Positions 8,950-29,910 of a stretch of DNA of 64,000 bases are shown piece after piece. The position numbers were made by a program, and so were the translations under genes. Location: contig NC_045717.1 of NCBI RefSeq assembly GCF_009834535.1, positions 16,864,001-16,928,000 of the forward strand, read 5' to 3'. The stretch comes from Camelus ferus. Lineage: Eukaryota. The notes beneath the pieces were generated by a model, which was not told the origin of the DNA, ran no database searches, and worked only from the letters and a program-made list of their open reading frames with translations. The first letter of the stretch is position 1. Each line of letters starts with the position of its first letter.

Positions 8950-9292
8950 TCCCTGAGGGAGGCGGGGCCGTTGCACCCAGATCCCGCCCCCATCCAGAAG
9001 CTTCCGCCCCTGATTGGTAGTCTAACTAGGCCAGGTCATTCCGCAGTTGCTATTGGCCAAGGCGCCAGTCCGTCGGCGCGCGGTCCCGCCTCCCCCGGGG
9101 AGAGACTTAAAGGGCTGGCCCGCTCCGCGGCAGCGGGATGTCCCCGCGCTGACCGCCCCGGGCCCGTGCCCACCCATGTGGATGCGCCCGGTCCGACCCC
9201 GCGCCACCATGTAAACGGCGCCCTCAGACGGACGCTGGCTTCACCGCCTGGGACCCCTCTGCCCTGCCCCGGGCCTCGGGGCCCTCAATGAG
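8950..9292 (+). promoter_or_regulatory. ABHD8 CpG promoter and non-coding exon 1
   Basis: GC boxes, CCAAT boxes (ATTGG near 9013 and 9052), CpG island, donor AG|GTAAGC at 9292/9293. Confidence 0.75.
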
Positions 9293-10522
9293 GTAAGCAG
9301 GGAGGGGGCCCTGTGAGAGGGACATCGAGGCCCCCGGGTCTTCCACTTCGGAGCGGGGTGTCCACAAAGCCCATGCTAGAGCTCTTAGGAAGCCGCGGAG
9401 CCACTGTGGCCTCGACCCCGCCGCAAGGCTGTAGGGCACCCGGGAGGCGGGAGACTGGCTCTGTGGAGGGGAGCTGGCATGGCGCATCTGCGCCCCCCTC
9501 CGCAATCCCGGGCTGGAACCCTGCCGGAGGTGGGGGGCGCGGCCTGCTCCCCTTCCTCCATCAGTAAGTACGGGCCACCGCAGGCGCGGCCTTTGGCATT
9601 CATTTATCCCCGTGGCGCCCAGGATAGGGACGGCGAGGGGTTGGTCCCATCCCCAGGGCTTAAACAATGGGGGTGCACTGCACGAGTATCCCCTTCGAGT
9701 TATGTAACTGCCTGCGGTTGCCATGGACACGGTTGGGGGGGTGCCCAGAGAGCAGGATGGAGGCCTGGAGGCCCCCAGGTTCTCCATCCTCATCTTCACC
9801 ACTGGAGGCTGTGTGTCAGGTCCTCAGAACCCAGAGTACTGATCAGTGGGAACAGAACAGTTTCTCCCAGAGTGTCTGGGCCTCAGCTTGTTGGTCTGTG
9901 AAACAGACCCACTGCACTGTGGTCTTGGGGAGCTGGGCAAGGCCTTCTGGAGCTCAATTTTGAAATCCCTCTCCCAGAGCCTTGCTTTTCAGGAGCCAGG
10001 TGTAGACACCTGGTATCAGGGCTCATTGGGATCTGGGCTGTTTAGGTGCCTTTGGAGCCCTCAGAATGTGCTGGTTTAGTGAAAGTGAGTTAATGAAACA
10101 GTGCATGAATGAATGGATGGATGGATGGTTGAATGGGTTTAGTAAGACGTGACTACAATAAATCTGAGCTGGAGGGTCCTCGGGGGTTGGGCCATATTTG
10201 CCACAATGTCCTCTCCTCTGGGAAGCCTGCCCTGATTCCACCACCTTCTCTATGGATGCCTTTTAGTGTCACCCATAGCCATGTCCTTTGCTCTAGGATA
10301 GACTATGCTGGGCCAGGAAGGTGGCCAACCTCATGCAGGTACTGACCAGACAAAACATCTTAGTGCTTGGTTGGCTTTGGCCCTCCCCAAACTGGAGCCT
10401 AGATGGGGCCTCCCAGTGCAACACATCTGACACGGGTGTGGGGAGTGGGTGCTGTGGGAGTGGAGGAATCCCTGTTTAAACGGCCTTTGAGCTGGCTGTC
10501 TCCCCCAGTCACAGGACACACC

Positions 10523-13500
10523 ATGCTGACCGGGGTGACCGATGGGATCTTCTGTTGTCTGCTGGGTGCACCACCCAATGCCGTGGGGCCGCTGGAAAGC
10601 GTCGAGTCCAGTGATGGCTACACCTTTGTGGAGGTCAAGCCTGGTCGTGTGCTGCGGGTGAAGCATGCTGGACCAGCTCCGGCCCCAACCCCACCTCCAC
10701 CACTGCCGGATACCGCCCATGGGGACCAGTCCGGCTTGGTCCACTGCCAGCGCAGAATCACCGTGTACCGCAATGGGCGGTTACTGGTGGAGAACCTGGG
10801 CCAGGCACCGCGAGCTGACCTCTTGCATGGGCAGAATGGCTCTGGGGAGCCACCAGCCGCCCTAGAGGTAGAGCTGGTGGACCCAGCGGGCAGTGATGGC
10901 CGCTCAGGCCCGGGCAGTGCTGGCAGTGGTGGGCGACGGCGGCGAGCCCGACGCCCCAAGCGGACCATCCACATTGACTGTGAGAAGCGTATCACCAGCT
11001 GCAAGGGCGCCCAGGCCGACGTGGTGCTCTTTTTCATCCACGGTGTCGGCGGCTCCCTGGCCATCTGGAAGGAGCAGCTGGACTTCTTTGTGCGCCTGGG
11101 CTATGAGGTGGTGGCACCCGACCTGGCTGGCCACGGGGCCAGCTCAGCCCCCCAGGTGGCTGCAGCCTACACCTTCTATGCGCTGGCAGAGGACATGCGC
11201 GCCATCTTCAAGCGCTATGCCAAGAAGCGAAACGTGCTCATTGGGCATTCCTATGGGTGAGCCAATGCTGGGGTGGGGATGAGGGTAAGGGGTGGGGGCT
11301 GGCAGGAACTGGACACCCACATACAAAACGCTAATTTCCCTTCTTGAAAAAATCCCATTAACATCTGCCACAGAACAGGGATTCCTGCCACCAATGCTAT
11401 TGTTTCACATTGTTCTAAAGCAGTGTCTCAACCTCCAAATTATTGACATTTTGGATCAAGTAATTCTTTTCTGTGAGGGGCTTTCCTGTGCACCGTAGGA
11501 TGTTTAGCAGCATCCCTGACCTCTGCGCATTAGATGCCACTAGTGCAATGGTCTAGTGATGATCATGGCAATCAGAAATGCCTTCAGATGTTGCCAAAGG
11601 TCCTCTGGTGGGCAGAATCACCCCTGGCTGAGACGCACTGTCTTCGACGAAGTTCAAAAATTGGTTGCTCTGAAGACCCCAAGGGCTCCAAGGAAGGACT
11701 AATTGGAATTCCATACATTTTGTTTATAAGGGCTCAGGTTGCTGTAATTCACTATCCCTTAAATGAGTGATGGATAATACCACCTTTCTTTTGATGAGGG
11801 GGGAGGTAATTAGGTTTAATTGTTTGTTTGTTTGTTTGTTTGTTTATCTAATGGAGGTACTGGGGATTGAACCCGGCACCTTATGTATGCTAAGCACTCA
11901 CTCTTACCACTGAGCTATAACCTCCCCACTCCATCTAGCATTTAAATTAGAGTCCACTCTATGGAAGGCTCTGGGTTGGGGTGACTGATCACTGCCAAGT
12001 GGTACCATTTGGTCCTTTACTCAGGAAGAAAGGCAGGATCTGATCAGCCAGCCAGGTTGAGAACCACTGTTTCAGCAGTTGCAGCCCATGCAATTAGCCA
12101 AGAAAACGAAATGTTATATAAGTTTCCAAAAGAAAGGAAGACAGACTGGAAAGTAACCTAGCTCCTATTTGTTTATATGAAAACATCCCCCAAAATGGAT
12201 GGTTATGCTAAATAATTCCTCCAGTTAAATGACCACCCATCTGTGGAAATACCTCTTACCCCTTAACTATGCTATGAAGTCAGCACAGTTACTATGTGAC
12301 AGATTTGGAGATGGAAGTTCAGAGAGGTTAAGCAGTTTGCCCAAGTGCACCAGTGAGTCACTGGCACAGTCAAGTCCACCCAACTTCTGCTTGTATCCTG
12401 TCCCTCTTTTCAGCAGGAGTTGGCAAATTTTTTTTTGAAGGGCCAAATATTACATATTTTAGATTCACAAGCCATACTGTTGGTCTCTGTTGGAACTTCA
12501 CAAGACTACTCCAGGAAAACAGTCATAATTGTAAACACATGGGCATGGCTTTGTTCCAATAAATCTTTATTTACAAAATATCTGACATATTTACAAAATT
12601 GTAAACTTAGTTGACAAAAACAAGTAGCTAGCCCACAGGCCATAGTTTGCCAAATGAACCCTGCTTTAGGGGGAATGAGGCCTGGACTGTGGGGGCTCCT
12701 CAGGCTGCACCCTTCCACCTTGCATAAGGCCGGCAGATGTGCGATGCCCAGAGGCCGATGAGAGAAGATCCTGAAAGGGAAGGGATATGCAGGAAACAGT
12801 CACCTTCTCTGAGAAGCCAAAGGATTTGTTCAATCAAATAGTTTTCCTGATACTTGGAAATTAATAATTCTTACCTCTTTGGGGGTCATGGTGACTTTGA
12901 GGATTTGATGAAAGGTCTGGATTTGGATCCTCTCCAAAAGAAAACAAAAATCCATGTTCAACACACACACACACAGACACACAATCTCACAATACCAGGG
13001 CATTTGAGGTGCCCCCCCCATCCCTCACCCCCCCCCCATCTGGTGTCCATGGATCCCAGGGGAAGAATCTTGGCCTTCAAGGACCTGCCTCTGGGTGAGG
13101 GGAGGGCATTAACCCCCTCCCTGCTTGTATCCTGCTGACCACTGCCCTTCAACCCTCCCCACCATCCACCTATGGGGCAGGGTCTCCTTCTGCACGTTCC
13201 TGGCGCACGAGTACCCAGACCTGGTGCACAAGGTGATCATGATCAACGGAGGGGGCCCCACAGCACTGGAGCCCAGCTTCTGCTCCATCTTCAACATGCC
13301 CACGTGTGTCCTGCACTGCCTGTCACCCTGCCTGGCTTGGAGCTTCCTCAAGTGAGTGACCCTGGCCCTGCCCTGGCATCTCCCCGAATCGGATGGGAGG
13401 GGAGGTTGTAATGCTGGGGCTGGAATGGGGGACACCCCTGGTGGGCGAGCTGGCACAAGGGCTCCAGCGGTGCCTCCCAAACCCCAGGGCCGGCTTCGCC

Positions 13501-14907
13501 CACCAAGGAGCCAAAGAGAAGCAGCTGCTGAAGGAGGGCAATGCGTTCAACGTGTCGTCCTTTGTGCTTCGGGCCATGATGAGTGGCCAGTATTGGCCCG
13601 AGGGCGATGAGGTCTACCATGCCGAGCTCACCGTGCCTGTCCTGCTTGTCCACGGCATGCATGACAAGTTTGTGCCGGTGGAGGAAGACCAGCGCATGGC
13701 CGAGGTAGGGGCATGACACCCCGGCCACCACACCCCACCACACCCCCCTTGCACAGCCTAAGGGGACCCTGACACAAGTGCTCCAGCCCCAAGGAAGTCA
13801 GAGCTTAGATCAAAAGTCAAAGGTGGAATCCAGGAAGTGGGGCTCCTTGGACAGGTGGTGGGATGTTTGTGCTGCCCCACTGCACATAAAAAGGCACTCT
13901 TCACAGCTGGGATTTGTGATGGGTTACATAATTCTGAGAGAGGGCTTTAAATTAGAAAGGGTCTTTAAATTAGAGTCAGAGATCTTTAGTGCTTAGACTA
14001 GCTCTGGATCAGTGGTTCTTAACCAGGGATAATTCTGTCCTCCAGGGGACATGTGGAAGTGTCTGCAGACTTTTTGGTTGTTACGACTGTGCAAGAGGGA
14101 GGTGCTACTGGTGGCTTCTGGTGTGTGGAGACCAGGGATGCTGCGCTGCCCAACACCCTAGAATGAGCAGGCCTCACTGCAGAAAAAGATCCGGCTCCAA
14201 AAGTCTCAGTAGAGTGGAGACTGAGATACCCTACCTTAGTGTGAGAGACCTTGTCTGCGTCTCTCAGTGATTTCTCACCCAGGTGACTTTGCCCCCTAGA
14301 GACATTGCCCCCTAAAGACATTTGGCAATGTCTGGAGACATTTTAAATTGTCACACTGTGGGGGGTGGCAGGGAGTGGGATGCGATTACTGGCATCTAGT
14401 GATGCTCGAGGCCAGGGATGCGGCTGAGTATCATACAGTGCATGAACAGTCCCTATCCCAGAGTATGATCCTGCCCCAAATGTCACTAGTGCCCAGGTTG
14501 AGAAATCATGCTCTGGACATACTGTAGGCACTTAATAAATGTGGAATGAGTGAATACCGAGTTGGGCTCCAGCAAGGTGACAGGTCACCCTCCAGCTCCC
14601 CCTTGGGTGGAAATGGGGGAATATAGGATAGACTGCAAGAGAGACATCCTGATAGATAGCTAGGGAGTCTCAGGGCAGCCTGGCCCCGAGGTCCGCCATC
14701 CTGCCTCTACCCATCTTGAGCCTGCGTCCTCCGCAGATCCTGCTCCTGGCCTTCCTGAAGCTCATCGACGAAGGCAGCCACATGGTGATGCTGGAGTGCC
14801 CGGAGACGGTAAACACGCTGCTCCACGAATTTCTGCTCTGGGAGCCAGAGCCCTCGCCCAAGGCCCTGCCCGAGCCCCTGCCTGCGCCCCCAGAGGAGAA
14901 GAAGTAG
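10523..14907 (+). CDS. ABHD8: Alpha/beta hydrolase domain-containing protein 8 (430 aa)
   Basis: Coding exons 10523-11256, 13181-13351, 13488-13704, 14737-14907 (1293 nt, in frame). HGVGG motif, GHSYG nucleophile elbow across the exon 2/3 junction, HGMHD and EGSH motifs, ends PAPPEEKK*. Confidence 0.98.
11421..11640 (-). mobile_element. MER20 (hAT-Charlie DNA transposon)
   Basis: Reverse complement follows the MER20 consensus (ACATCCTAC.GTGCACAGG, CAAAATGTCAATA, GGTTGAGA) with CAGTG-like termini. Confidence 0.8.
11788..11927 (-). mobile_element. tRNA-Ala-derived SINE (camelid vic-1-like)
   Basis: GGGGAGGTTATAGCTCAGTGG...GGTTCAATCCCCAGTACCTCCA, then an (AAAC)n tail and TAATTACCTCCC. Confidence 0.85.
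12414..12663 (-). mobile_element. MER58A-like DNA transposon
   Basis: Reverse complement contains GTAAATAAAGATTTATTGGAACAAAGCCATGCCCA and ATTTGGCCCTTCAAAAAAAAATTTGCCAACTCCTG. Confidence 0.75.
14010..14232 (+). mobile_element. MER20
   Basis: CAGTGGTTCTTAACCAGGG...CCAGGGGACATGTGG...CCAGGGATGCTGC... Confidence 0.8.
14265..14510 (+). mobile_element. MER20 (tandem second copy)
   Basis: GACATTTGGCAATGTCTGGAGACATTTT...GGCCAGGGATGCGGCT...GGTTGAGAAATCATG. Confidence 0.8.
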
Positions 14908-15417
14908 CGACTGAGCTGGCCGGGTATCACTTAGTGAGCGCAGGAGCAAGAGGAGGAGGCAGGAGCCGGGTCGGGTCTGCAGCGTGGATCACCTGGGCGG
15001 GCCCTCCGCTCCGGTGGGCGGGATCAGGTCAAGGAGACGCCCCCAGGCCGGCTGGGCAGGACGTGGCATTCGTGGGAGCCAGGTGCGCACAGTGCTCTCT
15101 GCTTCAGTCCTGCGGTGACCATCGGTGTTTCGGGTCCATAGCCGGGCCCCCCGCAGAGGATGACCTTGTACAGAAGCCCTCTCCTCCACAACGCCAGGGC
15201 CGAGGCAGGCCCCCACCCGCTCTCTGTCTTCCGTGTCAGCCATGCTTGATCCTGGGACTCACGAGCCCCCAGGGACCCTCGGGGCCCCTCCCCAATGCCC
15301 GAGACCCCTTACCACCCCCACCCCATTCCTCGGCGCTGGGAGCTATTGTTGCCCAAGGTGGGGAGGGTTTGGGAGGGGGCTAGCGCCACCGAACCTGCAC
15401 ATCTCAACTTGTAACTC

Positions 15418-15423
15418 AATAAA
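15418..15423 (+). terminator. ABHD8 poly(A) signal
   Basis: AATAAA about 510 nt after the stop codon. Confidence 0.8.
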
Positions 15424-15759
15424 AAGTGACAATCCAAGTCTCCGGACCAGTGCTGGATGACTTCAGGACGGGGTCGCCCTGAGCTTGTTTTCCCATGTGC
15501 GGGCTGGACTTATGGTGCCTCCCACTCGGGGCATCTAATTAGAGTAGCCATAATTGATGCCAGCTCCATGCAAGGCCCTGTGCTGGGTATCTTAAACCCA
15601 GAGGTTCGTCAATGCACACTACACAGCAAACTGGTACCTCTTACTGTCCTGTTTTTATCTTACAACTTGATCACTTTTGTCATAAAGATGGTTTTTATTT
15701 TGAATCTTTTTTTGCCTGGTGGAAGGATTTCCCTGCTCAGTGGCCTCTGTATCTTTTTT

Positions 15760-15892
15760 CTTTTTAAGGAAAAAAAACTTTTAAGACGGGAGGTAATTAT
15801 TTTATTTGCTCATTTTTAATGGAGGTACTGGGGATTGAACCCAGGACCCTGTGCATGCTAAGCACACATTCTATCACTGAGCTATACCCTCC
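15760..15892 (-). mobile_element. tRNA-Ala-derived SINE (camelid vic-1-like), second copy
   Basis: GGAGGGTATAGCTCAGTGATAGAATGTGTGCTTAGCATGCACAGGGTCCTGGGTTCAATCCCCAGTACCTCCA plus an A-rich tail with the same TAATTACCTCCC motif. Confidence 0.85.
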
Positions 15893-16035
15893 ACCCCTCT
15901 CTATTGTATTCTAATGTATATATATCTAGATTTATCTGTGGTTTGTGTGGACGGTGGGAGGAGAGATTGGTCTCCTCAGCTGCTGCACCTTTGGTCCTTT
16001 CCCCGCTGGTTTGTGACCCCACATTTAATTTAAAG

Positions 16036-16259
16036 CAGGGGTTCATACAAGGACACTGTCGTACTTTGGCAAATTCAGGAGACATTTTTGATTGCCACAA
16101 CTGGGAGTGGCGGAGGTGGGGGTGGTGAGGGAAGTGCTCCTGGCGTCTGGTAGGTGGGGCCCAGGAATGCTGCCTGACACCCTACAATACACAGGACAGC
16201 CCCCACCGCAAGGAGTAACCTGACCTCAAAGTCAGTAAGGCAGAGGTGGGGAAACCCTG
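16036..16259 (+). mobile_element. MER20
   Basis: TTTGGCAAATTCAGGAGACATTTTTGATTGCCACAACTGGG...CCTACAATACACAGGACAGCCCCC...GAAACCCTG. Confidence 0.75.
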
Positions 16260-17541
16260 TTAGACAAATACCATCTCTTCTGGGCCTTTTGGGGTGGGGG
16301 GCGTCTGGATTCTTTCTATTTGCGTATTCTTGGGAGATGGCACGCAGTTTCGATTGTTATCGCTTTATCAAGCAACTACTTGGTGTCTGGGAGAATTCCG
16401 TGTCTTACAAATGAGCAAACAGAAGCTCGGAGAGTAGTTTCTTCAGCTCAGTTAAAATGGTAGCACCCAGGCACCCTCCATGGGCAGGGACCCTAATTAT
16501 CCACAGAGTACTCAGGGGCTTAGCAGTGGAGGCAGTGGAGGAATGGAGGCCGGTAGCACCTTGGCCTGCCCCCTGCAAGCCCTGGTTCGCTGAGCTGCAA
16601 GACGGACAGGTGTTGAATCCAATGAGGCAGCAGATCTCACCAAGTCCAGAAACCCTCTAGACTGTTTTGAAGAAACAACTTTTGGAAAATTTAAATGATC
16701 CCATCAACACTATCCCAATAGTGGCTTGGCATTTACTGAAGCTCTTTGCATAAAGTCGGGGTTACTGATCTCATTTTACAGTGGAAGGAACAGGTTCAGA
16801 GAAGCAACGCCACGAGGCTCCAGTCACACAGGGATCCCTAGGAGTGCTGCTGTCTCACACTAGCACCGGGAAGATCTCCCCAGCCCTGCCCACCCCTCAC
16901 CACACACAATCGGCCCCTCGAGAACATTCCAGAACCCTCCCCCCTTCCCTCAGAGACTTTCCACCTGGGCTGCAGAGCTGCCTCTGGCTCAGTAGGGCTC
17001 TAAGCAAACACTATCCCATGACTTCATTTAATCTGATCCCCACAATGACCCCCTGAGGTAGCACCTCGCACTTTCCCCAGGCTCAGAGAGAAATTACTGC
17101 TCCGAGGTCCCATAGCTGGAAGCAGCATAACCCCGTACTTGAGCTGGGCAGATTCCCTTCGTGTAACGGATTGGAAGCCCCTGGCCCAGCCCACACTGTG
17201 GGTCTTCTGTGTCTGGGAGATAAAAAATGGATTCTTTGCACAGACAGGACCAAACTGCCAAAGCATTGGCATGTTTCAAAGCACCAGAATGTTCCAAAGA
17301 CCCATCTGGTCTACTTGTTCTCCTCTCACATCCCCTTAGTCTCCTCCCATGACAGGGAGCTCACTACCTCTCCAGCAGTTCCATCTGTAATAAAGTCCTC
17401 CCTCAGTCTACAAGGGAGACCTGCCTGGCTGTTCCCCAACTAGCCCTCTGGAGCTAGAGATGCGGGGCTGCTCTCACAGGGCAGCTGGAACATTCAAACA
17501 CTCTGCTCTCTACCTAAGCTGAATGGCCAACTCCCCAGGGT

Positions 17542-20500
17542 TCAGCCACGGGCCTGGATGTCCTGGGGCCGCAGCTCTCGCTCACCCTCAGCCAGGAAGA
17601 CAAGGAGGGCACGGTGCAGCAGATGTACCCCTAAGCGGCGGCGCCGGTGCAGTGGCCAGCCTGCCACCACTCCATAGCAGTGTCCTTGCTTCTGGTTGGT
17701 CAAGGTCTGGATCCCTGAGGAGATTGGGGGTTAGGTCACAAAGGCAGCCTCCAGGAACCCCTGGCAGAAGTATATGCCAGTGAATGCACTGGGTATTGCC
17801 CTCGAGCAGGAGTAAACCAATGGAGCAAAATATGTACATGTGCAGATACACAATTGGTGCTCAATAACTGCTCACTGAACAAATGAACAGCCCTGATGGA
17901 GGAAGGGGTGAGGAAATCAGCAGATCTAGTGCCCTTCATGTGACAACCCCCACCACCAACACACACACAAGCCAGGCACCCACCTAGAGCATCCACAAGA
18001 CATGCCTCTCGAGTGTAAGCCTCCACGGCAACCACATGCTGGAAGCAATGTAGGGAGACAACTCCGCTGACCACTGGCCCAAATGTCCAAGATCTGGCGC
18101 ACCTTGGGACAGGCCTAGGGAGGGGGGCCAAGGCAAGGGGTTAGGAGTCCGCCCCCCAGTTCCCTCCTTCTTCTGCCTGCCTGCAGCTGGGCTGCTGCTG
18201 CCATGACCCTTGTCCTTATCCTCACACCTGTTTTCCTGGCCGCCCACGGTGACTGAGGGCCTCCCAGAGGTGGACATCTGGCCGGGCCCGTGTTCCCTTG
18301 CCCACATAGAAGATGGCATGTACAAAAATCCGAAGGCATTCAGCCAGGGTCAGTGAGAAGGCCCGGGTTGGCAGGTCCTGAGTCTCCCTAGATGAAGCAG
18401 ACGGCTCAGAGAAAAAAAAGTGATGAGAGTCACCCCAGAGACAGTCTCTGAAGTCACAGAGCAAACTGAACCCACATCCAGTGACTCCCGTTACGTAAAA
18501 GGCAGTGGCGGGGGTGGGAACTGTTCCCCCAAGGACACTCAGCAGCTTCAATTGGATCCAACTGTCTTTTTTTCTTTTAATAAATTTTTTTTTAAAAATT
18601 GAATGAAAGATTCTTTAAATTCTACAGTGCTTCACAGTTTTCAAAAGTTTCACACACATGATTTCATATAATCCAAAAATAACTTTTTAAATTCTCCTAT
18701 ATCGCCCCTCCCCCATCCCCTCTCCACACTGGTAATCACTAGTTTGTTTTCTATATCTGTGAGTCTGCTCCTTTTTTGTTTTATTCACTAGTTTGTTGTA
18801 TTTTTAAGATTCCACATATAAGTGATATTGTACAGTNNNNNNNNNNNNNNNNNNNNNNNNNNNNNNNNNNNNNNNNNNNNNNNNNNNNNNNNNNNNNNNN
18901 NNNNNNNNNNNNNNNNNNNNNNNNNNNNNNNNNNNNNNNNNNNNNNNNNNNNNNNNNNNNNNNNNNNNNNTATATAAGACATATGTCACAATTATATATA
19001 TATAATTATATATATATCACACCAATTGCCTTTTGTAAATAAAGAAGCTGATGACCAGAGAAGGCCAGTTTCCTTCTTAAGGACACACAGAATATAAGAA
19101 CCAATCCCAGAATTTCCGGGTCCCACTTCCAGGTGACTTCTGCTCCAAGTACCTGGGGTCCAGGAGCAGATAAGTGAAGCTGGACTTCACAACTCCCTCC
19201 CGCCACCTTCTGGAGGGATCCGGCCGCTTAAACTGCTGGGCAAGAACATCCTCATCTGCCTGGGCATCTGGGATGCGGCCTGTCCGCAGGGCCTCGGCCA
19301 ACTCTGGGCTGTGCCCTGAAAATTCTGGGCCTGGGAGGGGAAACTGGGTCAAGAGAGACAAAGGAAGGGGTGGTTCCCAGAGATGGAGGGAGAAGTAGGT
19401 TGCACTGAGAGCCAGGGGGTCTCCAGGGACTCCTGGAGGTTCCTTGTACTCTGGATGCCCAGAAGGGACTAACCTGGAGCAGCCTGGGCTTCTTCCAGCC
19501 GTCGGAGGTAGTGTGGCCGGCTGAAGGGCGTGATGGGGACAGGGCTCTCACCAAGCGCCCGGAGTGCTTGCAGCAGCTCCAGGTCAGATATGGTGGGGTC
19601 CAGTGGGCATTGGCAAGAGGGGACGGGGTCTCTGCTCCCCATGGAGCTCGCCTCATCCTCTGTCAGCCAGAGGGCAGCCACATCACTGTCAAGGGACTGG
19701 TCATCTTTCTGGAAGTGGAATTCACAGGGTCCAGACGGTGGTTCCCAAGGGGGCCTATTGGCTGGGCTCCTGTCTGGGAAGGACTTAGGGGAGGGGGAAG
19801 CATCTGGCAAGGTCAGAGTCAGGGCTTGCAGGCGGGCATTTAGTTCTGTCTCTCTGCTCTCCATGAGGGCTTGATGCTCCAGCTGTGGGGTACCCGAAGA
19901 TCTTGGCACCCTCTGGGAGGGTTGGACACCAGTCCAGGGGTATGTGTCGGGGCATGGATCCTCAGCTCCAGAGGCCTCAACCGCGGTGACAAAGGAGGCA
20001 ACTGAGCTGCAGTCCCAGCGCCCTAGGGGGGACCCCGAGATGCCATCTGTGTCAGCAATGTTAGGGTGGGCAAGAAGGCTGGGGGGTCCAGGGCTAGCCT
20101 TCAGGTTCATGTCCTTGCTGTCACCTCTGTCCAGTGCTGTGGAGTCCAGCATCACACTGGGAGGTCCAGGGGGGCTGATACCCAGCCCCTTTTCCCAAAG
20201 GCCTGGGCCTGGAGCAGGGGATAAGAGTGAGTGTCAGAGAGGAGGGAGGAGGAAGTAAGAGACAAAGACGGAAGTCAGATCAGACAGAAAGAAGCGGCTG
20301 CAATCACGAGGAGAAGGGAGCGAGTCGGAGGCAGAGAGACTGACTGGAGATCCTGGACATAAAACTCAAACAGGGGGAGAGAGTGGACATCAGAGACAGA
20401 GATTTGCAAAGCTAGATCAGATGCTAAGCATCCCCAGCCGCGCAGGCTCCACTCACCACCAGGCTGGGGCTCTGGGTCCTGGGTGACTGCCCGGGTCCGG

Positions 20501-21688
20501 GTCGGGGTCCTGGTCTGGGTCTCCAGCTCCCGCAGGATACGCACACAGTTCTGATGCCCCTGCTGCTCCGCCAAGTCCAGCGGCCGGAGTCCATCCTGCA
20601 GCGGCTCGGTCAGCAGGGGGCGCCCGAGGCCCTCTCCTCCCTCCCTCCCTCCCTCCCTCCCTCAGGGTTGGCCCTGCTACAGCCAACGCAGGGGACCCCA
20701 CCTGGTCGCGCAGCGCGGGGTCCGCTCCCTGGCTCAGCAGCAGCTCCAGGCCGCGGCGACAGCCCCAGGCAGCAGCCACGTGCAGCGGCGTCAGCGCCTC
20801 GGCCGATCTGGGGCAGAGGCGAAGGAGGGGATCAGTGGAGGAGAGAACTCGATCTCCGCCCCGGGTCCCGGAGCCTTGGCTCTCAGCCCCCTATCTCCGT
20901 TCTCTAGCCTGAGATACCACCCTTGGAATCTAGATCCTGCGCCCTCGGGCCGGAATTCAAACCTCTGCTCTCTGACTCTAGAAACCATCAGATGCGAAAC
21001 TTTGATTCCTCACTTTGGCCCCAGCGAAACCTCATGCCCCACTATAGGTCTAGTACCCTAGCCTCTGCCGCCCTTGAACCCTCAAGATCCCTTCCCAGGT
21101 TCCCCAAGTTCCGCCCCCGGGTCCCCATCCTTGGATCTTGGGACGCCCTCTCCAAGGCTCCCAGGTCTCACCCTCGGACTCGGGAGACACCTCCTCTGCG
21201 CGGCATACCTGCCCCAAGCCTAGACCTCCTCTCACCGTGCGTTGGGGTCTCCGCCACGGCGAAGCAGGGCCTCAAGGCAACTCAGACTCCGCGGGTGCCG
21301 GGCTCTGGCCGCCAGGTGCATGGCCGCCGCGCCATCCTCCAATACCAGGTTGGGGTCGGCACCGCGGCGGAGCAGCTCCTCCACGACCCTACGGTCAAAG
21401 GGTCAGAGTGGACCGCGACACACGCCCCCCACTCCCGCCCCGCCCCCCCGGGCCCCGCCCTCACCGCAACTCCTCCTCCCGCAAGGCCACCCGCAGCCGC
21501 CGAGCCAAGCCAGCCGCAGCGCCCATGCCCCGGGGGCCGCCCAGGCCCGCGGCCAGGCGGGCTGATTTCCAACTTCCCGCGGCGCCCTTGTGCGCACGCG
21601 CCGTCCCGCCCACCGGCTGGGTTCCCCGCGCGGAAGCGCAGTGAAGGGTCTCCAACCAGGCAGACCCACGCCGCATTGTCGTCCACAT
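17542..21688 (-). CDS. ANKLE1: Ankyrin repeat and LEM domain-containing protein 1 (GIY-YIG endonuclease); carries a +1 frameshift in exon 8 as assembled
   Basis: Exons: 21526-21465 (upstream in-frame ATGs at 21688 and 21676), 21388-21236, 20807-20702, 20595-20457, 20208-19474, 19330-19153, 18387-18228, 18114-17984, 17714-17542. Ankyrin repeats, LEM motif SDLELLQALRALGESPVPITPFSRPHYLRRL, GIY-YIG motifs SSFTYLLLDPR and AIFYVGKG. The sum from the 21526 ATG is 1837 nt, one base too many. Confidence 0.95.
18572..18836 (-). mobile_element. L1 3' UTR fragment in ANKLE1 intron 6
   Basis: Poly-T head, 'ctggtaatcactagtttgttttctatatctgtgagtctg...agattccacatataagtgat'. Runs into a gap. Confidence 0.8.
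18837..18970. other. Assembly gap (134 N)
   Basis: Run of N, followed by (TA)n. Confidence 1.
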
Positions 21689-22260
21689 CGAGGTTCGGAA
21701 GCTTTAGCGCTGGCCCGACCCCGCGACACCAAGTGGCGTCCAGACAGGGCTTGGGGCTGCAGATAAGGGCCTGGAAGGGTGGAGGTCGCCGTCTGTGCCA
21801 TTATCTCTCAAAATGGTGTAAACACGAACGCACCCTGCTGGAGGGGGTGGAGCTACGATCCGGGCACTAAGTCTCAGGGCATTAAGTCTCCCGGAATCCT
21901 CTGCTCAGGCGGCCTCCATTAGCACACACATCCCTGATGGTATATAAGTCTTCAGTTAATAGCTCCCGCCTGCAGAAGCTATGCGTCTCCCGTTTTCAGT
22001 CCTGCAGGGTCGGGAGCCCATTACTTAGGAGATCCGGGACTCTTAGGGCTTTAGTTTCCCCATATGCAAAATGGGAGAATAACCCCAGGCGGCTTTGAAG
22101 TTGATCGAGGGGCCTGGCACACAGATGCCCAATAAATGCTCATGGGAAAGAAAAGCTGTTTCCCCATAAAACTATTTTTTTATGGAACTGAGAAAATCTA
22201 GCTGGTAAACTTTTTTCACAATTTCTCATTATCCAGGAAGACAATTGAATAGTGGACCTG

Positions 22261-22716
22261 TTATAAGTGTCTCCTTTCTCCCTTCCTCTGGGGAGCACCC
22301 ACACTATTTCCTAATGGAACTATAAACCTCCCTTCCCAGAGAGGCTTGACAGAGACCTGGCCAATCAGAGCATTCCACAGCTATGGCCCATGACTGGCCC
22401 AAAGCAAGGTTATATGACCCAGGCAAGGCCAGTCATATGGGCGAGCTGGGAGAGCCCTCACATCATCTGGGTTGGGATCTGGGGAGTGGTCACAGCCATC
22501 TCACCCCTTTCCACGGGTTGGGAAGAAAACAGGGCACACTGAATACCAACCATTCAGGGTATTTCACCCTTCCCCAGTGGCAACATCAGTGCACTTGGAT
22601 ACAGCCATGCCTGAAGCTGCCTAAGGCTTCCTATCCACAAGAACCAAGCCATTCTCCTTTCTGCTCAGGGGATGGGTCTTCTGTCACTTGGAACCAAAAA
22701 GATCCCAATTAACACA
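22261..22716 (+). mobile_element. ERVL-type solo LTR (LTR16/LTR33-like)
   Basis: 'ggccaatcagagcattcc...tgacccaggcaaggccagtc...cagccatgcctgaagc...ttctgtcacttggaaccaaaaaga...taacaca'. Subfamily uncertain. Confidence 0.65.
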
Positions 22717-22755
22717 AGTTGATTGTTGTGGACCTGGGTTAGGGAGTCTCCGATT

Positions 22756-22761
22756 TTTATT
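22756..22761 (-). terminator. BABAM1 poly(A) signal
   Basis: AATAAA on the - strand, about 260 nt after the stop codon. Confidence 0.75.
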
Positions 22762-23021
22762 TTGATGACAAAAATCACACAGGTAACAACAAAAATTACA
22801 ACTGAAAAACTGGGAGTGGGATGTGGGCTGGAAAACATGGGGAATGGCTGCCTAGAGTCCTTGGGATGCTTCCCGGAACCCTGGGTTTCTTTCCAGGGTT
22901 CCCCAGGTGCCTGGGGTGCCTCCTGTGACCTACTCTGGGGGTCCTACAGAGCCCAGTTTGAGAACCAGTATTCTAGGCCACAGGTTTCTTTGCACAAGAA
23001 GGTTGGATGTACAGGGATGGT

Positions 23022-26000
23022 TCAGACAGTGGCCTCAACCTCGGTGGCTTCATCGTCCTCCTCCAGCAGGCTGTAGGAGGCATGGCTTTGGCAGGGCCGC
23101 TGCAGTGGATGAGCCAACAGCTTGGCCATACAGTTGTGAAGCTCAAGGGCTGGCCCAGCCAGTGCCACTTCATACTTATAGCTGGTCCCCTTGGTGTCCA
23201 GGCTGCCCATGAAGGCAAACATGTCCTGTGGGGTCAATGAAGGGCTGTTCAGACAGAGGTTCCCCTGACAGGCCCTCCCTGTCCGGAGGGCTTCCCAGGA
23301 GGGGCCTCAGGGATGGGTTCTGAAGGGTAAAGAGGAATTTGCCAGGCAGAAAACATTCCCTTATTCAGCAAACATTTCATGCCACCCACCTAGTGCTAGA
23401 ACCCCAAAAGGTCTCAGTGCTGGAGCCCCTGGTCTGGAGAGGCATGGCTGGATACAATGATCTCCAGCCCCCATGCTGATCTTCCTTGAGGAGCAGGGAA
23501 GGCTTCCCAGAGTAGGGACTTCTAATTTGGGTATTGAAGTATAAATAGGAGCTGGGCTCAACTCCTCTGGCTCACAGCTGGGTAAACTGATGCTCAAAGA
23601 GATAAGTGCCTGACTCCATGTACCACAGTTAGTTCAGGGCTGGGATGTAAAGAACCAGCAGAACCTCACAAGGCAAGAAGGCAGCAGGCACAGAGAAAGT
23701 AATAGCAACAAGAGAGGGAAGCAATGAGGAAGTGGACAGGACCCTACATGCTCCTGGGCCACTGTCCCAACAGCCCCATTAATTCACTGCAGAAATGTGG
23801 GGAATGGTTGCTGAGTGACCATGATCCAGCAGGGCCAGGGCTGCAAAATGGAGATGTGCCCCCCACCCCCTACACTAGGGCAGGTGGATTCTGAGACATC
23901 CCATCTACACCTATACCCTCTTGCCACCCACACTCACAGCAGTCTCTCACCTTCCAGCTCATCTCCTCCTCCTTCTCATCGGTGCCATTGTGGATGTAAA
24001 CAACATCAAAGAAGAAATAAGGGCACTGGAACATTTTCTGCAGGGGGAGGAAAGCCAGCCTTTGGGACTTGGGTCACTCCAGGCCCCCAAGACCACAATC
24101 CCCCGGCTTCTGCCTTAGGCTCTGGGAACTGGTCTCAAGGCACCCCAGCTCCTATGATCAGGAAGTCCCTCCTGGGATCTAACCACCATCCTGCTGGCTG
24201 TAGGCATCCCTCCCTCTCCCAGGCCTTGCTCACCTTCATGGGTTCTGTCAGGGAGAACTGAGGCTGGCAGGGTGGACGGCTATAGACAAGGATGGTGCGG
24301 ACCACGTATGGTGGTGGAATTGTCTGCACATTCTCCGTGACTGGCAGCTCAGTCTTCTGTTGGCTACACAGGGGGAAGGAGGGAGGACGGGTCAGAGCAC
24401 ACTTTGATAGCCCACTCCTCTCATCACCCTTGAAGGCCCCACCTGACCCCTCCCAAGTTCACTGTTGCCTCTGAGCTTTCCCACATGCTGTTCCCTGTGC
24501 CCCAGCACCTCCCTAGCTTGGCCTTTCTGCCTGGCCTCTCCTGCTCCATTAGAGGCTTTGTTGACCCCAAAGCTAGAGCCTGCTCCGGCTATCCTCAGCA
24601 CCCTGAGCATCCCCCATCACTGCGTTGAGTTGGACCTGCCCTACCAGGCCAGGAGACTCTTAGGGAGGGACCACATCTTATTTTTTTTTTATCCCTGCAT
24701 GGGACCACATCTTATATGTTAAGTCAGCACACAGTTCCCCACTCAGCCACAGGTGGATCTCATGTTGAGCAGAGGACACTAGGCAGACAAAGGGCTAATA
24801 CCCTTAATATGTAAAAAGCAAATCTGATCAACAAAAACAAAGCCAACAGCCTCCTAGAAAAATAGGTAAAGGGGACGAATAGACAAATTACTGAAAGAAT
24901 AATGAATGGCTTTAAAATGAGTGAAAAGAAAAGCACAGCAAAGCAAGATGTGGCCTCTTCCCACCTATCAGATGGGCAGAACATTCAGCAGTGTGGTCAA
25001 CCCTGGTGTTGGGGGAGATAAACAGGGTTAATTTCCTGGGAAAGTACTTTGGCAAAGTCTAGCAAAATTAAAAACACACACCACCTTGTTTTTGCATGTC
25101 TTTCATTGGGAATTTATCCCATAGATTCACTTGCAAACTCTGCCGAGATGGTTGTACCAGGATAATCATGGCAAACAAGGCAAAACACACTCCACAACCA
25201 CCATCAGGGGGCTGACAAAAACAGGGCTTGGACTCCTTGGGCCCACAAGCTGAGATTTTTTTTTTTTTTTTTCATTTTTAAACTGTTGGGAAGAAAGAAA
25301 TTCAAAGGGAGACTATTTTGCCACATGTAGAAATGATGTGAAATTCAAATTTGTGTCTGTGAATAAAGTTTTATTGGCTTATAGCCACACCCACTTGCAG
25401 GCATCTGGTCTGTGGTTACTTTTAGATTACAGAGTCTAGTTGCTACAACAGAGACCATGTGGCCAACAAAGCCAAAAATATTTACTGTCTGGCCCTTTAA
25501 AGAAAAAGTTTGCTGCTGCTGCCGCCGGAGAACCACTGGGCCGTTACAGAGTAAAGGAGGGCAAGACTTGAGAAAGAACCTCTTTTGCAAAACTGCTTCC
25601 AGACAGGTAAGTGAGCAGTTGTTCCCAGAAGAAAGGGTGGGAAAGGAAGACTTCAGACCTCCCTAAAGGTCTATTTCTGGGCTGTCTGGAGCTTTTACCC
25701 AGAAGGGGTGGTGAACAATAAGTTCCCCCGGGGGGACTTACATGAGGCTGAAGAGACCTTCCAGATCTGGTGGGAACGCTAAGGAGAAGACCGGTGGCAG
25801 CAATGCGCGGGTGAGCAGGGAGAGGGGGCTTTCCTCCTCCTGATGCCAGGAGAGCGCAGATGCCTGAGCCTATTGCCAGGAGACATGCTGTGTAACCCTG
25901 GCCTGGTTGCTTGCCCTCTCTGAGCCTGTTATTCCCTCAATACAGAACATGAACTAGAGGGCCAGCATCAAATGTCCTGAAGACCCTTAGTGACTGAAAG

Positions 26001-28468
26001 CCCCCTTTCCCACGGGGCTGGAGCCATCCTCCTCTCATGAAAGAGCCATGGGTGTCCCTGTCCCCTTCTTCCCAACACATTGTTTTCTTTGTAACTCACT
26101 GGAATCATATTATATCGAAGTTCTGGACTGCAGTGAGCCTTTAATATTCAGGTTAAAGGGGCAGAAGCAGTGATTGCGACTTTTCAGTCACATATGGCCA
26201 TTTATTGTGCACCGATTGTGTACTTGGCCCTTCCTGAACTATTCCCTGTGTGGATGCACTGTTGATCTCTGGAATCCAAATCAGCAGTTTTTGCTTCTGT
26301 ACTCTGACTTTATCTTCCCAGTGACCCTGTGGGGTAGGGGGTTCAGGCCTCCCATTTTACAGATGAAGAAACTGAGGCTTAGAAGGGTGACTGGCTCAAG
26401 CCTGATGTGGCAGAACTGGGATCGGGACCTGAGCTGGGGGAGCCAGGCCCCCCACCCGCCACCGCTGCTCCTGGAGCCCTCTGCATGGAAGGATACTGAA
26501 GGTGGAGCAGGACGCCGTCTCCAGGTCGTAGAGGCAGCTGCAAAGCTCTCGGGGGTCAGAGGTCAGGCCGGACAGCTGCCAGGAAGCACAAGACTCAGCG
26601 AGGGGTGCCCTTGATCCCCAGGGGACCCCAGGGAACCCAGCCGTGCCCCAGCCTCACCCAGGCGGTGTCATCGTTCACCACCACCAGCGCGAACTCATGG
26701 CTCTTGTCGATCTTGTGTTTTGTCCGCACGAACATCTCGATCATTTTCTGGGAGACGTTGAGGGCATTGGTTTTGGAGCTGGGGGTGGCCAGAGAGTGAG
26801 GGGGTGCTTAAGCCCCAGGTAATGCAGCAGGAGGGTGGCAGAGCCCTGGTGCAAACCCATCCCAGCTGACCCTCTCCTCATGGGTCCCTGGGGCCAGCCT
26901 GGGTCTCACATCTGATCCTTGGGAGAACCCCCACCTTGGTTCAGCCATGGGTCATCAGGAGTGCCAAGGAGGGGAAGGGGGGCTCATCCTCAGCATCTCC
27001 CAGAGCTCCTTAGGCTGCTTCCAGGCCCTGCTGCCTGACCCCAAAGAGACCTTGCTGCTCAGGGCAAGGGCTTTGGGGTCAGCCAGACCTTGGTCTGAGT
27101 TTGGCTCTGCCCACTGGCTGTGAGGCCTGGGCCCAGTCACTTTGTTTCTCAGAGTTTTCATTCATTGCTGTGATACACAGCATGTGACAGCTCTTGGAAC
27201 AGAGCTCCAGTGGGCCACAGTCGTATCATTACCCATTCTCACTGCTACTTGCCGACATCGCCAGGCCCCAGAGCAGGCCATTTAGGGGTGTCTCAGAGAG
27301 AGAGAGCCCTGAGTTTTGGGGGCTGGGCCCCTCCCAGCCATGGCTGCACATTTAAGTACCCAGCGGCCCTCTCACCCATTGAATGACTCCAGCTTTGGCA
27401 GCGACATTTCCTCCGACAGGTCCAGGCAGATGATCTGTCATGAAGTTGGAGTGTGGTGAGGGCTGTGTCCAGCAGCACCTGGAGACTGGACATTAACACT
27501 GGCCCCCACACCATCCTGCTGGCCCTCTCCAGGCAGCCCCATCTAAAAAGGCTGTATGATGACCTCCAATCCCCAACCAAGCCATCCACTTTGGTAGGAG
27601 GTAGCTCAGGGAACAGAGCACTGGACTAGGAGTCCTGGTTGATGAGTGAATAAATAACCCAGAGAACATTTAACACAGAAAGAAGAAAACAGAGTGGGTT
27701 GAACCATGGCCCTCCAAAAGATAGATCTACCAAAAGCATCAGAATGTGAATTTACTTGGAATTAAGATCTTTGCAGATGCAACCAAGGGAAAGATCTTGA
27801 TATAAGATCATGCTGATTTAGTGAGAAGTGTCCTTATAAAAGAAAAGAGGAGACTTGGAGACATAAAGGGGAAGGCTAGGTGCAGAGACAGAGACGGCAG
27901 TGATGCGGCCACAAGCCAAGGAACAACTGGAGTCCCCAGAAGGCTCCTCCCCTGGGGCCTCCAGAGGGAAATGACATCTTGATTTTAGACTTCTGGCCTC
28001 TAGAACTGTGAGAGAATACATTTCTGTTGTTTTAAGTCACTTAATTTGCAGTCATATTTCGTGACAGCCTTAAGAGTCTAACACTAAAGGACTGTTTATA
28101 AGTGAATCCTGAAAGATGAGAATGTTTAACCCAAGGTTCCCTAACGCCTCAAGGCCACAGACCAAGCCATCACTTACCACTTTCTCTGGACAGTTGACCC
28201 TTGGCGTCCGCACTTGGACCTCTGGGGCTGGCGGAGGCACCTGCCATGGCTTGGGGCCAGCTCCTGGAGGGTTGGGGGTCCCGTCCTCAGCACTGGCAGC
28301 TTCACCCTCACCCTCGCTACGGCTGCCCACACTGGCCTGGGCCCCCACCGCCCGGTCCTCAGCCCCCTCAGGGTTGGAGCGGGTGCGGGGCCTGGGCTCC
28401 GTTGACTGTTCCTCTTCCTCCTCTTCCTCCTCCTCCTCTGTGGGACTGCTGGGCTCTGCCACCTCCAT
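23022..28468 (-). CDS. BABAM1: BRISC and BRCA1-A complex member 1 (MERIT40), 331 aa
   Basis: Coding exons 28468-28178, 27434-27376, 26778-26658, 26575-26497, 25766-25742, 24363-24234, 24037-23951, 23225-23022 (996 nt, in frame). Starts MEVAEPSSPT-E10, VWA-like core IICLDLSEEM, ends EATEVEATV*. Confidence 0.98.
24770..25210 (+). mobile_element. Old L1 ORF2/3' fragment in BABAM1 intron 6
   Basis: A-rich 'acaaagggctaatacccttaatatgtaaaaagc...gaatagacaaatt...cccacctatcagatgggca'. Boundaries approximate. Confidence 0.65.
25350..25518 (+). mobile_element. MER58A-like DNA transposon
   Basis: GAATAAAGTTTTATTGG...AATATTTACTGTCTGGCCCTTTAAAGAAAAAGTTTGC. Confidence 0.75.
26300..26435 (+). mobile_element. 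MIR SINE
   Basis: 'cccattttacagatgaagaaactgaggcttagaagggtgactggctcaag'. Confidence 0.7.
27694..28084 (+). mobile_element. MaLR solo LTR (MLT1-type)
   Basis: 'agaatgtgaatttacttgg...gatctttgcagatg...ccacaagccaaggaa...gacttctggcctctagaactgtgagagaatacatttctgttgttttaag'. Confidence 0.8.
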
Positions 28469-28679
28469 GGCTCCTGGGTGGCAGGATGGAGCAGGAACGG
28501 AGGAAGCCAGGATCTTTTCCTTAGGGGTTTTAAAAGCATTTGGTTATTGGGCAGAACAGGCATGAGCCTCTTACTGACTGTAAGAGTTGCTCCTCTCAGG
28601 AACTCAGTTTCTTCATCTGTAGAATAGGTGCCTTTTACACTTATCAGCCCAGCATCCACTCTGACTTAAGGTAACAGTC

Positions 28680-29060
28680 TCCCATTTTTTTCTGTAGGGC
28701 TAACTCTATTCCTTCCCCTCTTAGCTAGTGAGCACATCTGGCCACTGTGAATGGCTCAGAGATGGGGACATGACTCAACACAGGCCAGTGAGGGGTAGCT
28801 CTGGGACTTCGAATAGTTCTGTTAGAGAAGAGTGACTCGTTAGAATCGCAGAGCTGGGAGGTTACAAGTCGAGAGCTACTAGGAGCCTCTTTGCCTCCAA
28901 GAGGGGAAAGACAGCCTGCCTGAAGTGATGCTCCCCCAGAAAACAGCAGATAAGACGTCAGAGCCCCTGGATCCAGCTATGCCTAACTTCCCTTTCCTAC
29001 TGAAGCCAGACTGAGTTGGGTTTTCTGTTACCTGAAACTGAAAATGGCTTGGTAAAGAGA
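28680..29060 (+). mobile_element. ERVL-type LTR fragment (LTR33/LTR16-like)
   Basis: 'cagagcccctggatccagctatgcct...gagttgggttttctgttacctg'. Confidence 0.55.
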
Positions 29061-29414
29061 GGAATAATAACTTCTAGGATTCTCCCCAGTGGGCGCTGGC
29101 TGCCGAGTGGGTGTCTGCACAAGGGAGGGGAGCAGATCTGAGTGCTACAAGTTCCTTTGAGAAAGACCAGGACGCCAGTGGAACAGTTCGCCTATCTGGG
29201 GCTGTCGGGGGTGGTCTCTGAGCGCCTTGCATCTCCCATAACTTCCAAGGAAAACAAGGCTTAGCTGTAGCAAGAGGGATGGAGGCTAGACTGCAGGAGA
29301 AACCAGAGCTGAAGGCGGAAACCCTAGGGCAGGCGAGGGACTGAATTTTTAGGGTAAGGGAAGCTAGGGCCTCTAGGAACGGATCCCGCGCGCTTTCACC
29401 ACCCAACTGCTCAC

Positions 29415-29910
29415 CGTAGACTGAGCCTCCCTCCAACTCGGCTGCCGAACCCCTAGGAAGCCGCCATCTTTAGCAGCCGGAAGTGGTGCGGCGCGGCCGC
29501 CACGCCCCCTGGGAAATGCAGTTCGACAGGCCGTAAGAGATGAATGGGACGAGGCTGGAGAGCCTTGGAACCTGATAGGCTGGGACTTTGCTAGAAGGCG
29601 GGGTTTGGATTGTGTCAGACTGGAGTGGAGTTAAGTGGGGCGGGATCTGGAATGTGATTGGCTAAAGTGAGATTAAGGCATAGCTTTTCTGTTTCAGGCC
29701 GATTCACACTGCGCTGGTCATCGCTTCTACCGTCTTAGGCTGGGGAACGGCTGAGTAGAGTGAGGCTTTTAATGGAATAGGCTCAGAAGAATGGAGAAGG
29801 CCTAGTCTGCCTTGTGACGGCCGGAGTGGGACTTAGTTGGGCGGGATTTAGAAGAGGCGGGGCTGATTGGTGATTGGTAGAGTCGACCAGGTTCCAAGGT
29901 CCCGCCCAGC
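29415..29910 (-). promoter_or_regulatory. BABAM1 non-coding exon 1 (about 29480-29415) and promoter, head-to-head with USHBP1
   Basis: Donor CG|GTGAGC at 29415/29414, YY1 AAGATGGCGGC 29470-29460, ETS CCGGAAGT 29477-29484, ZNF143-like AACTGCATTTCCCAG 29523-29509, several GC and CCAAT boxes out to about 29910. Confidence 0.75.

What the first reader, a model, noticed from the sequence alone, without database searches (positions are those of the whole stretch)
17588..18114. ANKLE1 has a +1 frameshift inside the GIY-YIG nuclease domain
Seen: from acceptor CTAG|GCC (18114) exon 8 reads ACPKVRQILDIWASG, then CAGC (18069-18066) where three bases are expected, then GGA GTT GTC TCC CTA CAT TGC (GVVSLHC...) in the next frame. 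Exon 8 is 131 nt where splice phases require 3n+1 (130). The shifted frame reads QRSCLPTLLPAC... into exon 9 and stops at 17588. That stop is in the last exon, so the mRNA should escape NMD. It removes the conserved Glu of TREAC and Asn of LTNQ, which as I recall are catalytic GIY-YIG residues. No upstream AG restores the frame. A cryptic CTTCCAG|CAT at 18039/18038 would restore it but delete about 25 codons. Established: ANKLE1 (LEM-3 orthologue) cleaves branched DNA and chromatin bridges. Inference: either a real nuclease-dead allele or lineage loss, or an assembly artefact. CAGC could be a merged heterozygous CAC/CGC site.
Basis: partly seen in the sequence, partly recalled or inferred. Interest (0 to 1): 0.75.

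Follow-up and report, generated by a model that had tools for sequence, protein, structure and literature searches.

The report
ANKLE1 frameshift: probable assembly error
The extra base that breaks the DNA-cutting domain of ANKLE1 is really in this wild-camel genome assembly, but it is in no other camel sequence examined, and this assembly carries many such stray bases, so it is most likely a sequencing or assembly error, not a gene loss.

Summary
ANKLE1 coding exon 8 (18114-17984, minus strand) is 131 nt. It has one extra A at 18068 (GGT C[A]GC GGA). The shifted frame stops at 17590-17588 in the last exon.

The window is 100% identical to Camelus ferus assembly GCA_009834535.1. Four other camel sources read GGT CGC GGA with a 130-nt exon:
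- a HiFi C. bactrianus assembly
- two C. dromedarius assemblies
- one contig assembled from an independent sequencing run of a two-humped camel

Alpaca proteins also carry Arg at this codon. NCBI already labels the C. ferus model "LOW QUALITY PROTEIN". That model differs from its relatives at exactly this codon.

Everything else in the gene is intact, and downstream of the shift the old frame is unchanged, stop codon included. So lineage loss is refuted.

In 24 kb around the gene, the C. ferus assembly has three private +1 insertions against only six private substitutions. A published TOGA table counts 1,888 genes with inactivating mutations in this assembly, against 689 in the HiFi sister-species assembly.

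Best reading: an uncorrected insertion error (about 0.9), possibly a collapsed heterozygous CpG site. A real, young nuclease-dead allele remains possible (about 0.07); only reads can settle it. The scan also holds many other "+1 frameshift" notes on this genome.

The parts
21465..21688 (-). ANKLE1 coding exon 1 (ATG at 21688)
   Evidence: Exon chain rebuilt to match RefSeq C. ferus model P0178 residue by residue.
21236..21388 (-). Coding exon 2, ankyrin repeat
   Evidence: Pfam Ank E=6e-8.
20702..20807 (-). Coding exon 3
20457..20595 (-). Coding exon 4
19474..20208 (-). Coding exon 5 (large, poorly conserved middle part and LEM domain). Codon 225 (20158-20156) is Ser here and Asn in C. bactrianus and C. 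dromedarius.
   Evidence: Pfam LEM E=1.8e-4, below the gathering score on this piece alone.
19153..19330 (-). Coding exon 6, start of the GIY-YIG domain (FTY = human Y453)
18228..18387 (-). Coding exon 7 (IFYVGKG = Y486; HLWE = H498), ends in phase 0
   Evidence: PF22945 positions 16-50, E=1.3e-9.
17984..18114 (-). Coding exon 8: 131 nt here, 130 nt in every other camel sequence examined
18068..18068 (-). The extra A (GGT C[A]GC GGA), equal to CM020789.1 position 16,882,068. It lies in the codon equivalent to human 531 (camel 581), which is Arg, Cys or His in other mammals.
17542..17714 (-). Coding exon 9 (LTNQ = N565). The ancestral frame is intact to the normal stop at 17544-17542.
   Evidence: PF22945 positions 101-150, E=1e-13.
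17588..17590 (-). Premature TGA of the shifted frame, 124 nt into the last exon
18224..18227 (-). Tandem GTGT at the exon 7 donor. Use of the second GT adds 2 nt and would restore the frame downstream of the extra base.
   Evidence: Splice use is hypothetical.
18039..18040 (-). Cryptic AG acceptor inside exon 8. It would give a 55-nt in-frame exon lacking 25 codons, K519 among them.
   Evidence: Sequence.

Best explanation
[quoted passage not shown] The extra A at 18068 is most likely an uncorrected single-base insertion error of the long-read assembly GCA_009834535.1. It may have arisen where the sequenced animal was heterozygous G/A at a CpG (CGC/CAC) and both alleles were written one after the other. 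The animal then makes a normal 665-aa nuclease. The private status of the base, the assembly's error pattern and the RefSeq flag are shown here. The exact way the error arose is inferred.
For: (1) The window is 100% identical over 4,582 bp to C. ferus CM020789.1. (2) The A is absent from C. bactrianus GCA_048773025.1, a HiFi assembly according to PMC12905343. It is also absent from C. dromedarius GCA_000803125.3 and GCA_036321535.1 and from Logan contig SRR34793922_314118, which carries the two-humped allele at 18159. (3) RefSeq XP_032321216.1 for C. ferus is named LOW QUALITY PROTEIN. It differs from C. bactrianus at only two residues, one of them 581 (Ser against Arg), so NCBI dropped a base at this very codon. 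(4) There is no other lesion. Exons 1-7 translate exactly to the model, and downstream of the shift the old frame is identical to C. bactrianus through to the stop. (5) In 23.9 kb aligned four ways, C. ferus-private changes are 6 substitutions, three +1 insertions (18068, 8950, 29369) and one 26-bp deletion. Two of the insertions are outside any base run. Almost all indels of the other lineages lie in base runs or microsatellites. (6) At 29369 the assembly reads CCCT where dromedary has CCC and Bactrian has CCT, that is, both known alleles in tandem. (7) TOGA counts in PMC12905343 Supplementary Data 2 give 1,888 genes with inactivating mutations in C. ferus GCA_009834535.1, against 689 in the HiFi C. 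bactrianus. (8) The scan holds 91 notes mentioning frameshifts in this genome, many of them +1 in genes such as RTEL1, SLC4A2 and CD19. One was followed up as a false frameshift. These notes are leads only.
Against: No reads of the assembled animal, and no second C. ferus assembly, could be examined, so a private real allele is not excluded. The inserted base is not in a base run, which is the classic site of long-read errors. Ankle1-deficient mice are viable with no detected blood-cell phenotype (PMC4807109, abstract), so a real loss would be tolerated. By my own knowledge, the wild camel population is very small, which lets damaging alleles drift. The RefSeq flag is automatic. The local error estimate rests on three events, one of them the focal one.
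Confidence: 0.9

Rival explanations
1. The extra A is a real, young mutation, private to C. ferus or to this animal and perhaps polymorphic. It yields a 650-aa protein: 580 normal residues plus 70 new ones. The ankyrin and LEM domains and Y453, Y486, H498 and K519 are kept, but the metal ligands E551 and N565 are lost. The stop lies in the last exon, so the mRNA should escape nonsense-mediated decay, and the product would be nuclease-dead.
For: The base is in the deposited sequence. E551A and N565D abolish activity. The stop is 124 nt into the last exon. Mouse Ankle1 knockouts are viable. An intact downstream frame fits a very recent event as well as it fits an error.
Against: The insertion is private to an assembly with about 1,200 more broken conserved genes than its HiFi sister-species assembly. 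That assembly also has three private +1 insertions per 24 kb around the gene. The insertion does not duplicate a neighbouring base, which by general knowledge is the rarer kind of real 1-bp insertion. RefSeq treated it as an error.
Confidence: 0.07
2. ANKLE1 has been lost in camels or camelids as a lineage (a unitary pseudogene).
For: Only the frameshift itself.
Against: C. bactrianus, both C. dromedarius assemblies and an independent camel contig have the intact 130-nt exon, and alpaca proteins are full length with Arg at the site. There is no second lesion in any exon.
Confidence: 0.01
3. The extra base is real but is made good at the RNA level. Either the second GT of the exon 7 donor (adds 2 nt) or the cryptic acceptor at 18040-18039 is used, so an in-frame protein keeping E551 and N565 is still made.
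For: Both routes give an open frame. The second donor reads GTGAGG, a good intronic match to the consensus.
Against: Both routes remove or scramble K519 and the surrounding helix; K519A alone is 61-fold slower. The exonic side of the second donor is poor (GGT). No transcript data are available. This reading is needed only if the base is real.
Confidence: 0.02

Closest known systems
[quoted passage not shown]
   Same: It is the same locus and the same assembly (L002 is 100% identical to the window). All nine coding exons match.
   Different: The model leaves out one base of CAGC and reads Ser at residue 581, where all other camelids have Arg. The raw genome sequence keeps the frameshift.
Human ANKLE1 / C. 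elegans LEM-3, a GIY-YIG nuclease for branched DNA and chromatin bridges
   Same: The architecture is the same: ankyrin repeats, a LEM domain and a LEM-3-type GIY-YIG domain (Pfam PF22945 on every piece). All six catalytic residues are encoded at the spacing given in PMC10287932.
   Different: In this assembly E551 and N565 lie out of frame. Primates carry three extra residues (PPQ) before K519.
Uncorrected single-base indels in long-read genome assemblies that break reading frames
   Same: A single base, private to one assembly, sits in an otherwise perfect conserved gene. The assembly shows an excess of broken genes. The concern is raised for camel PacBio assemblies in PMC7468183.
   Different: The inserted base is not in a base run. 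A collapsed heterozygous site is suggested but not shown.

Membership tests
ANKLE1 / LEM-3 orthologue | LEM-3-type GIY-YIG domain | tested here: met
   PF22945 matches the exon 7, exon 8 (post-shift frame) and exon 9 pieces, with E from 1e-9 to 1e-13, each above the 27-bit cut-off.
ANKLE1 / LEM-3 orthologue | N-terminal ankyrin repeats and a LEM domain | tested here: met
   Ank E=6e-8. LEM scores 21.4 bits against a 24-bit cut-off on the exon 5 piece alone. Full-length camel orthologues carry PF03020, PF12796 and PF22945.
ANKLE1 / LEM-3 orthologue | Catalytic residues Y453, Y486, H498, K519, E551, N565 in one reading frame | tested here: not met
   All six are encoded at the right spacing, but E551 and N565 are out of frame in this assembly. 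They are in frame in all other camel sequences examined.
ANKLE1 / LEM-3 orthologue | Conserved gene order (next to ABHD8) | tested here: met
   An alpha/beta-hydrolase gene with ABHD8-type Pfam hits lies next to the gene in the camel loci, followed by MRPL34 and DDA1.
Unitary pseudogene / lineage gene loss | The lesion is shared by related species | tested here: not met
   It is absent from C. bactrianus, C. dromedarius (two assemblies), alpaca proteins and a Logan camel contig.
Unitary pseudogene / lineage gene loss | Further lesions or decay downstream of the first one | tested here: not met
   Exons 1-7 translate exactly to the model. The old frame downstream is identical to C. bactrianus, stop codon included.
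Assembly insertion error | Private to one assembly and absent from independent sequence of close relatives | tested here: met
Assembly insertion error | The assembly shows an excess of such events | tested here: met
   There are three private +1 insertions against six private substitutions in 23.9 kb. TOGA counts 1,888 genes with inactivating mutations against 689.
Assembly insertion error | Raw reads of the same animal contradict the consensus | not testable with these tools
   No read data can be reached. The only camel read-derived contig found (SRR34793922) is from an unidentified two-humped camel and lacks the base.

The most novel reading that the evidence does not exclude
The extra A is a real, recent frameshift allele in the critically endangered wild camel. 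It would be a natural ANKLE1 mutant that escapes nonsense-mediated decay and makes a nuclease-dead protein. That protein would keep its ankyrin, LEM and DNA-binding parts, so it might still sit at the midbody and compete with other bridge-processing routes.
Probability: 0.07. Interest if true: 0.4.

Novelty: not a real feature. Interest (0 to 1): 0.07.

Why it matters
If the base were real, a large mammal would carry a natural nuclease-dead ANKLE1, which would bear on how dispensable the "last-chance" chromatin-bridge nuclease is. As it stands, the value is practical. Single extra bases in coding exons of GCA_009834535.1 should be assumed to be errors until checked against the HiFi C. bactrianus assembly or against reads. 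The many "+1 frameshift" notes the scan holds for this genome should be read in that light.

Tried and rejected
- **Read-level evidence through Logan assemblies.** A homology search with the intact exon 8 to intron 8 ORF found no camel ORF; the best hit was 78% identical. An exact look-up of the insertion-bearing 131-aa ORF and of the 228-aa exon 5 ORF found nothing. These blanks are uninformative, because the gene caller did not call those ORFs even on the one camel contig that was found.
- **A second C. ferus source.** None appeared among the 9 cluster members or in the top hits.
- **The alpaca locus.** P0175 is not on record, so alpaca rests on protein sequences only.
- **The assembly paper.** Ming et al. 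2020 is not held in the library, so the polishing method is unknown to me.
- **Splice rescue.** All alternative acceptors in intron 7 of the right phase run into stops. Only the +2 donor and the internal acceptor stay open, and both lose K519.
- **Lineage loss.** Rejected.
- **The masked N run in intron 6 (18837-18970).** It was left alone. Alignments were cut on either side of it.

Full report
**What is in the sequence.** On the minus strand, exon 8 of a nine-coding-exon gene runs from 18114 (after ccctag) to 17984 (before gtgggt) and is 131 nt long. Its first frame reads ACPKVRQILDIWASG and then nonsense. From 18065 the next frame reads GVVSLHCFQHVVAVEAYTREACLVDAL. Spliced as assembled, the shifted frame runs on for 70 codons and stops at TGA 17590-17588, 124 nt into the last exon.

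**What the gene is.** Pfam places a LEM-3-type GIY-YIG domain (PF22945) on exon 7 (profile positions 16-50), on the post-shift part of exon 8 (70-96) and on exon 9 (101-150). It places ankyrin repeats and a LEM domain upstream. This is ANKLE1.
- PMC10287932 names the active-site residues of human ANKLE1: Y453, Y486, H498, K519, E551 and N565.
- E551 and N565 hold the metal ion, and E551A and N565D have no detectable activity.
- By counting from the motifs, the extra base falls in the codon equivalent to human 531. That lies after K519 (CPKV) and before E551 (TREAC) and N565 (LTNQ).

**Whose genome it is.**
- A profile-free search and two word-index searches returned mammalian ANKLE1 proteins. 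A tblastn of these against the window put camels on top, with whole exons 100% identical.
- The 90% cluster holds nine camelid proteins. One is XP_032321216.1, "LOW QUALITY PROTEIN ... [Camelus ferus]".
- Its locus (L002; GCA_009834535.1, CM020789.1) is 100% identical to the window over 4,582 bp. C. bactrianus differs there by 3 substitutions and 1 gap, and dromedary by about 14 substitutions.
- The window is therefore this C. ferus assembly, and the extra A is record position 16,882,068.

**The comparison that matters.**

| Source | Reading at the site |
|---|---|
| Window and L002 (C. ferus) | GGT CAGC GGA |
| C. bactrianus GCA_048773025.1 (PacBio HiFi plus Hi-C, PMC12905343) | GGT CGC GGA |
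| C. dromedarius GCA_000803125.3 | GGT CGC GGA |
| C. dromedarius GCA_036321535.1 | GGT CGC GGA |
| Logan contig SRR34793922_314118 (1,695 bp) | GGT CGC GGA |

- The Logan contig was assembled from an independent sequencing run. It carries the two-humped allele at 18159. It lacks both the extra A and the C. ferus-private A at 16950.
- All camelid proteins, alpaca included, have Arg at residue 581. The C. ferus RefSeq model has Ser there and otherwise differs from C. bactrianus only at residue 225.
- NCBI therefore restored the frame by dropping one base of CAGC at this very codon, and that is the reason for the low-quality label.
CGC, TGC and CAC are the pattern of a hypermutable CpG.

**No other damage.** Exons 1-7 (21688-18228) translate exactly to the RefSeq model. 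Beyond the extra base, the old frame is identical to C. bactrianus down to the normal stop at 17544-17542. A lineage loss is excluded. The event is either very young or not real.

**Is this assembly prone to such insertions?** I aligned 23.9 kb of the window (7600-18836 and 18971-31600, leaving out the masked N run) with the three other assemblies.
- C. ferus-private changes are 6 substitutions, three +1 insertions (18068 A; 8950 A; 29369 C) and one 26-bp deletion. The deletion lies between direct repeats, apparently in an ABHD8 intron.
- Almost all indels of the other lineages lie in C or A runs or in microsatellites (the one exception is noted at the end). Two of the three C. ferus insertions lie outside any run.
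- By general knowledge, real small indels are roughly an eighth as frequent as substitutions and cluster in repeats. Half as many +1 insertions as substitutions is not what mutation gives.
- At 29369 the assembly reads CCCT where dromedary has CCC and Bactrian has CCT. This is a single case and only suggestive.

**Independent published evidence.** Supplementary Data 2 of PMC12905343 gives TOGA counts on 18,430 ancestral placental genes:

| Assembly | Genes with inactivating mutations |
|---|---|
| C. ferus GCA_009834535.1 | 1,888 |
| HiFi C. bactrianus | 689 |
| Best vicugna and guanaco assemblies | 838-901 |

- An excess of about 1,200 broken conserved genes in a species that differs by about 0.1% in this region is best explained by base errors.
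- The scan's own notebook points the same way. Ninety-one notes on this genome mention frameshifts, many of them +1 in genes such as RTEL1, SLC4A2, CD19, OTOG and IL2RB. One (OR51E2) was followed up as a false frameshift. These notes are unchecked leads, not evidence.

**Weighing.**
- If about 1,200 of the private broken genes are errors and some tens to a hundred are real, the prior for a real lesion is under 10%.
- The insertion does not duplicate a neighbouring base, which lowers that further.
- ANKLE1's tolerance of loss (mouse knockouts are viable, PMC4807109) and the small wild-camel population raise it somewhat.
- I put the artefact at about 0.9 and a real private allele at about 0.07.

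**If it were real.**
- The product would be 650 aa: 580 native residues plus 70 new ones.
- It would keep the ankyrin and LEM domains and four of the six catalytic residues, but lack both metal ligands, so it would be inactive.
- With the stop in the last exon, the mRNA should escape nonsense-mediated decay (established rule).
- Two splice routes could restore the frame: the second GT of the exon 7 donor (CAG|GT|GTGAGG, which adds 2 nt) and the internal acceptor at 18040-18039. Both remove or scramble K519 and its helix, and K519A is 61-fold slower. All right-phase acceptors in intron 7 meet stops.

**What could not be done.**
- No reads of the assembled animal and no second C. ferus assembly could be reached.
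- Logan look-ups for ORFs spanning the site were blank for technical reasons.
- The assembly paper is not in the library.

**Verdict.** The biology is most probably ordinary: an intact ANKLE1 with one spurious base in one assembly, already flagged by RefSeq.

**Correction to two statements above.** Where the summary and the evidence say that the other lineages' indels all lie in base runs or microsatellites, the alignment shows one exception. The C. bactrianus-private 8-bp deletion at about 23925 is not in an obvious repeat. The contrast with the C. ferus insertions still holds for the 1-bp events.

Noticed in passing
window 8950 and 29369: There are two more +1 insertions private to the C. 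ferus assembly, both non-coding. One is GGG[A]TCT. The other is GG[C]CCT, read as CCCT where dromedary has CCC and Bactrian has CCT, as if two alleles were written in tandem.
   Followed up: partly
window about 13989: A 26-bp deletion is private to C. ferus. It is flanked by the direct repeat TAAAGATCTC and lies apparently in an ABHD8 intron. It could be a real slippage deletion or a collapse.
   Followed up: partly
window 18224-18227: The exon 7 donor of ANKLE1 is a tandem GTGT. The second GT is followed by GAGG, a better intronic match than the one in use. In intact camels its use would shift the frame.
   Followed up: partly
window 20156-20158: ANKLE1 codon 225 is Ser in C. ferus and Asn in C. 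bactrianus and C. dromedarius. Apart from the frameshift codon, it is the only amino-acid difference from C. bactrianus.
   Followed up: no
window 18066-18069 (codon equivalent to human 531): Across 163 mammalian ANKLE1 sequences this residue is Arg in 94, Cys in 44 and His in 24. This is the CGC/TGC/CAC pattern of a hypermutable CpG at a tolerant surface position of the nuclease domain.
   Followed up: partly
window 21615-21755 and 22461-22499: An older C. bactrianus model (XP_010970591.2) uses these stretches as alternative 5' coding exons in place of the usual first exon. They match the window 100% and 92% respectively. This is probably a prediction artefact.
   Followed up: no
L008 (Logan SRR34793922_314118): This is the only read-derived camel contig found over the locus. 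It carries the two-humped allele at 18159 and T at 18583, and it lacks the C. ferus-private A at 16950. The species of the run is unknown to me.
   Followed up: partly
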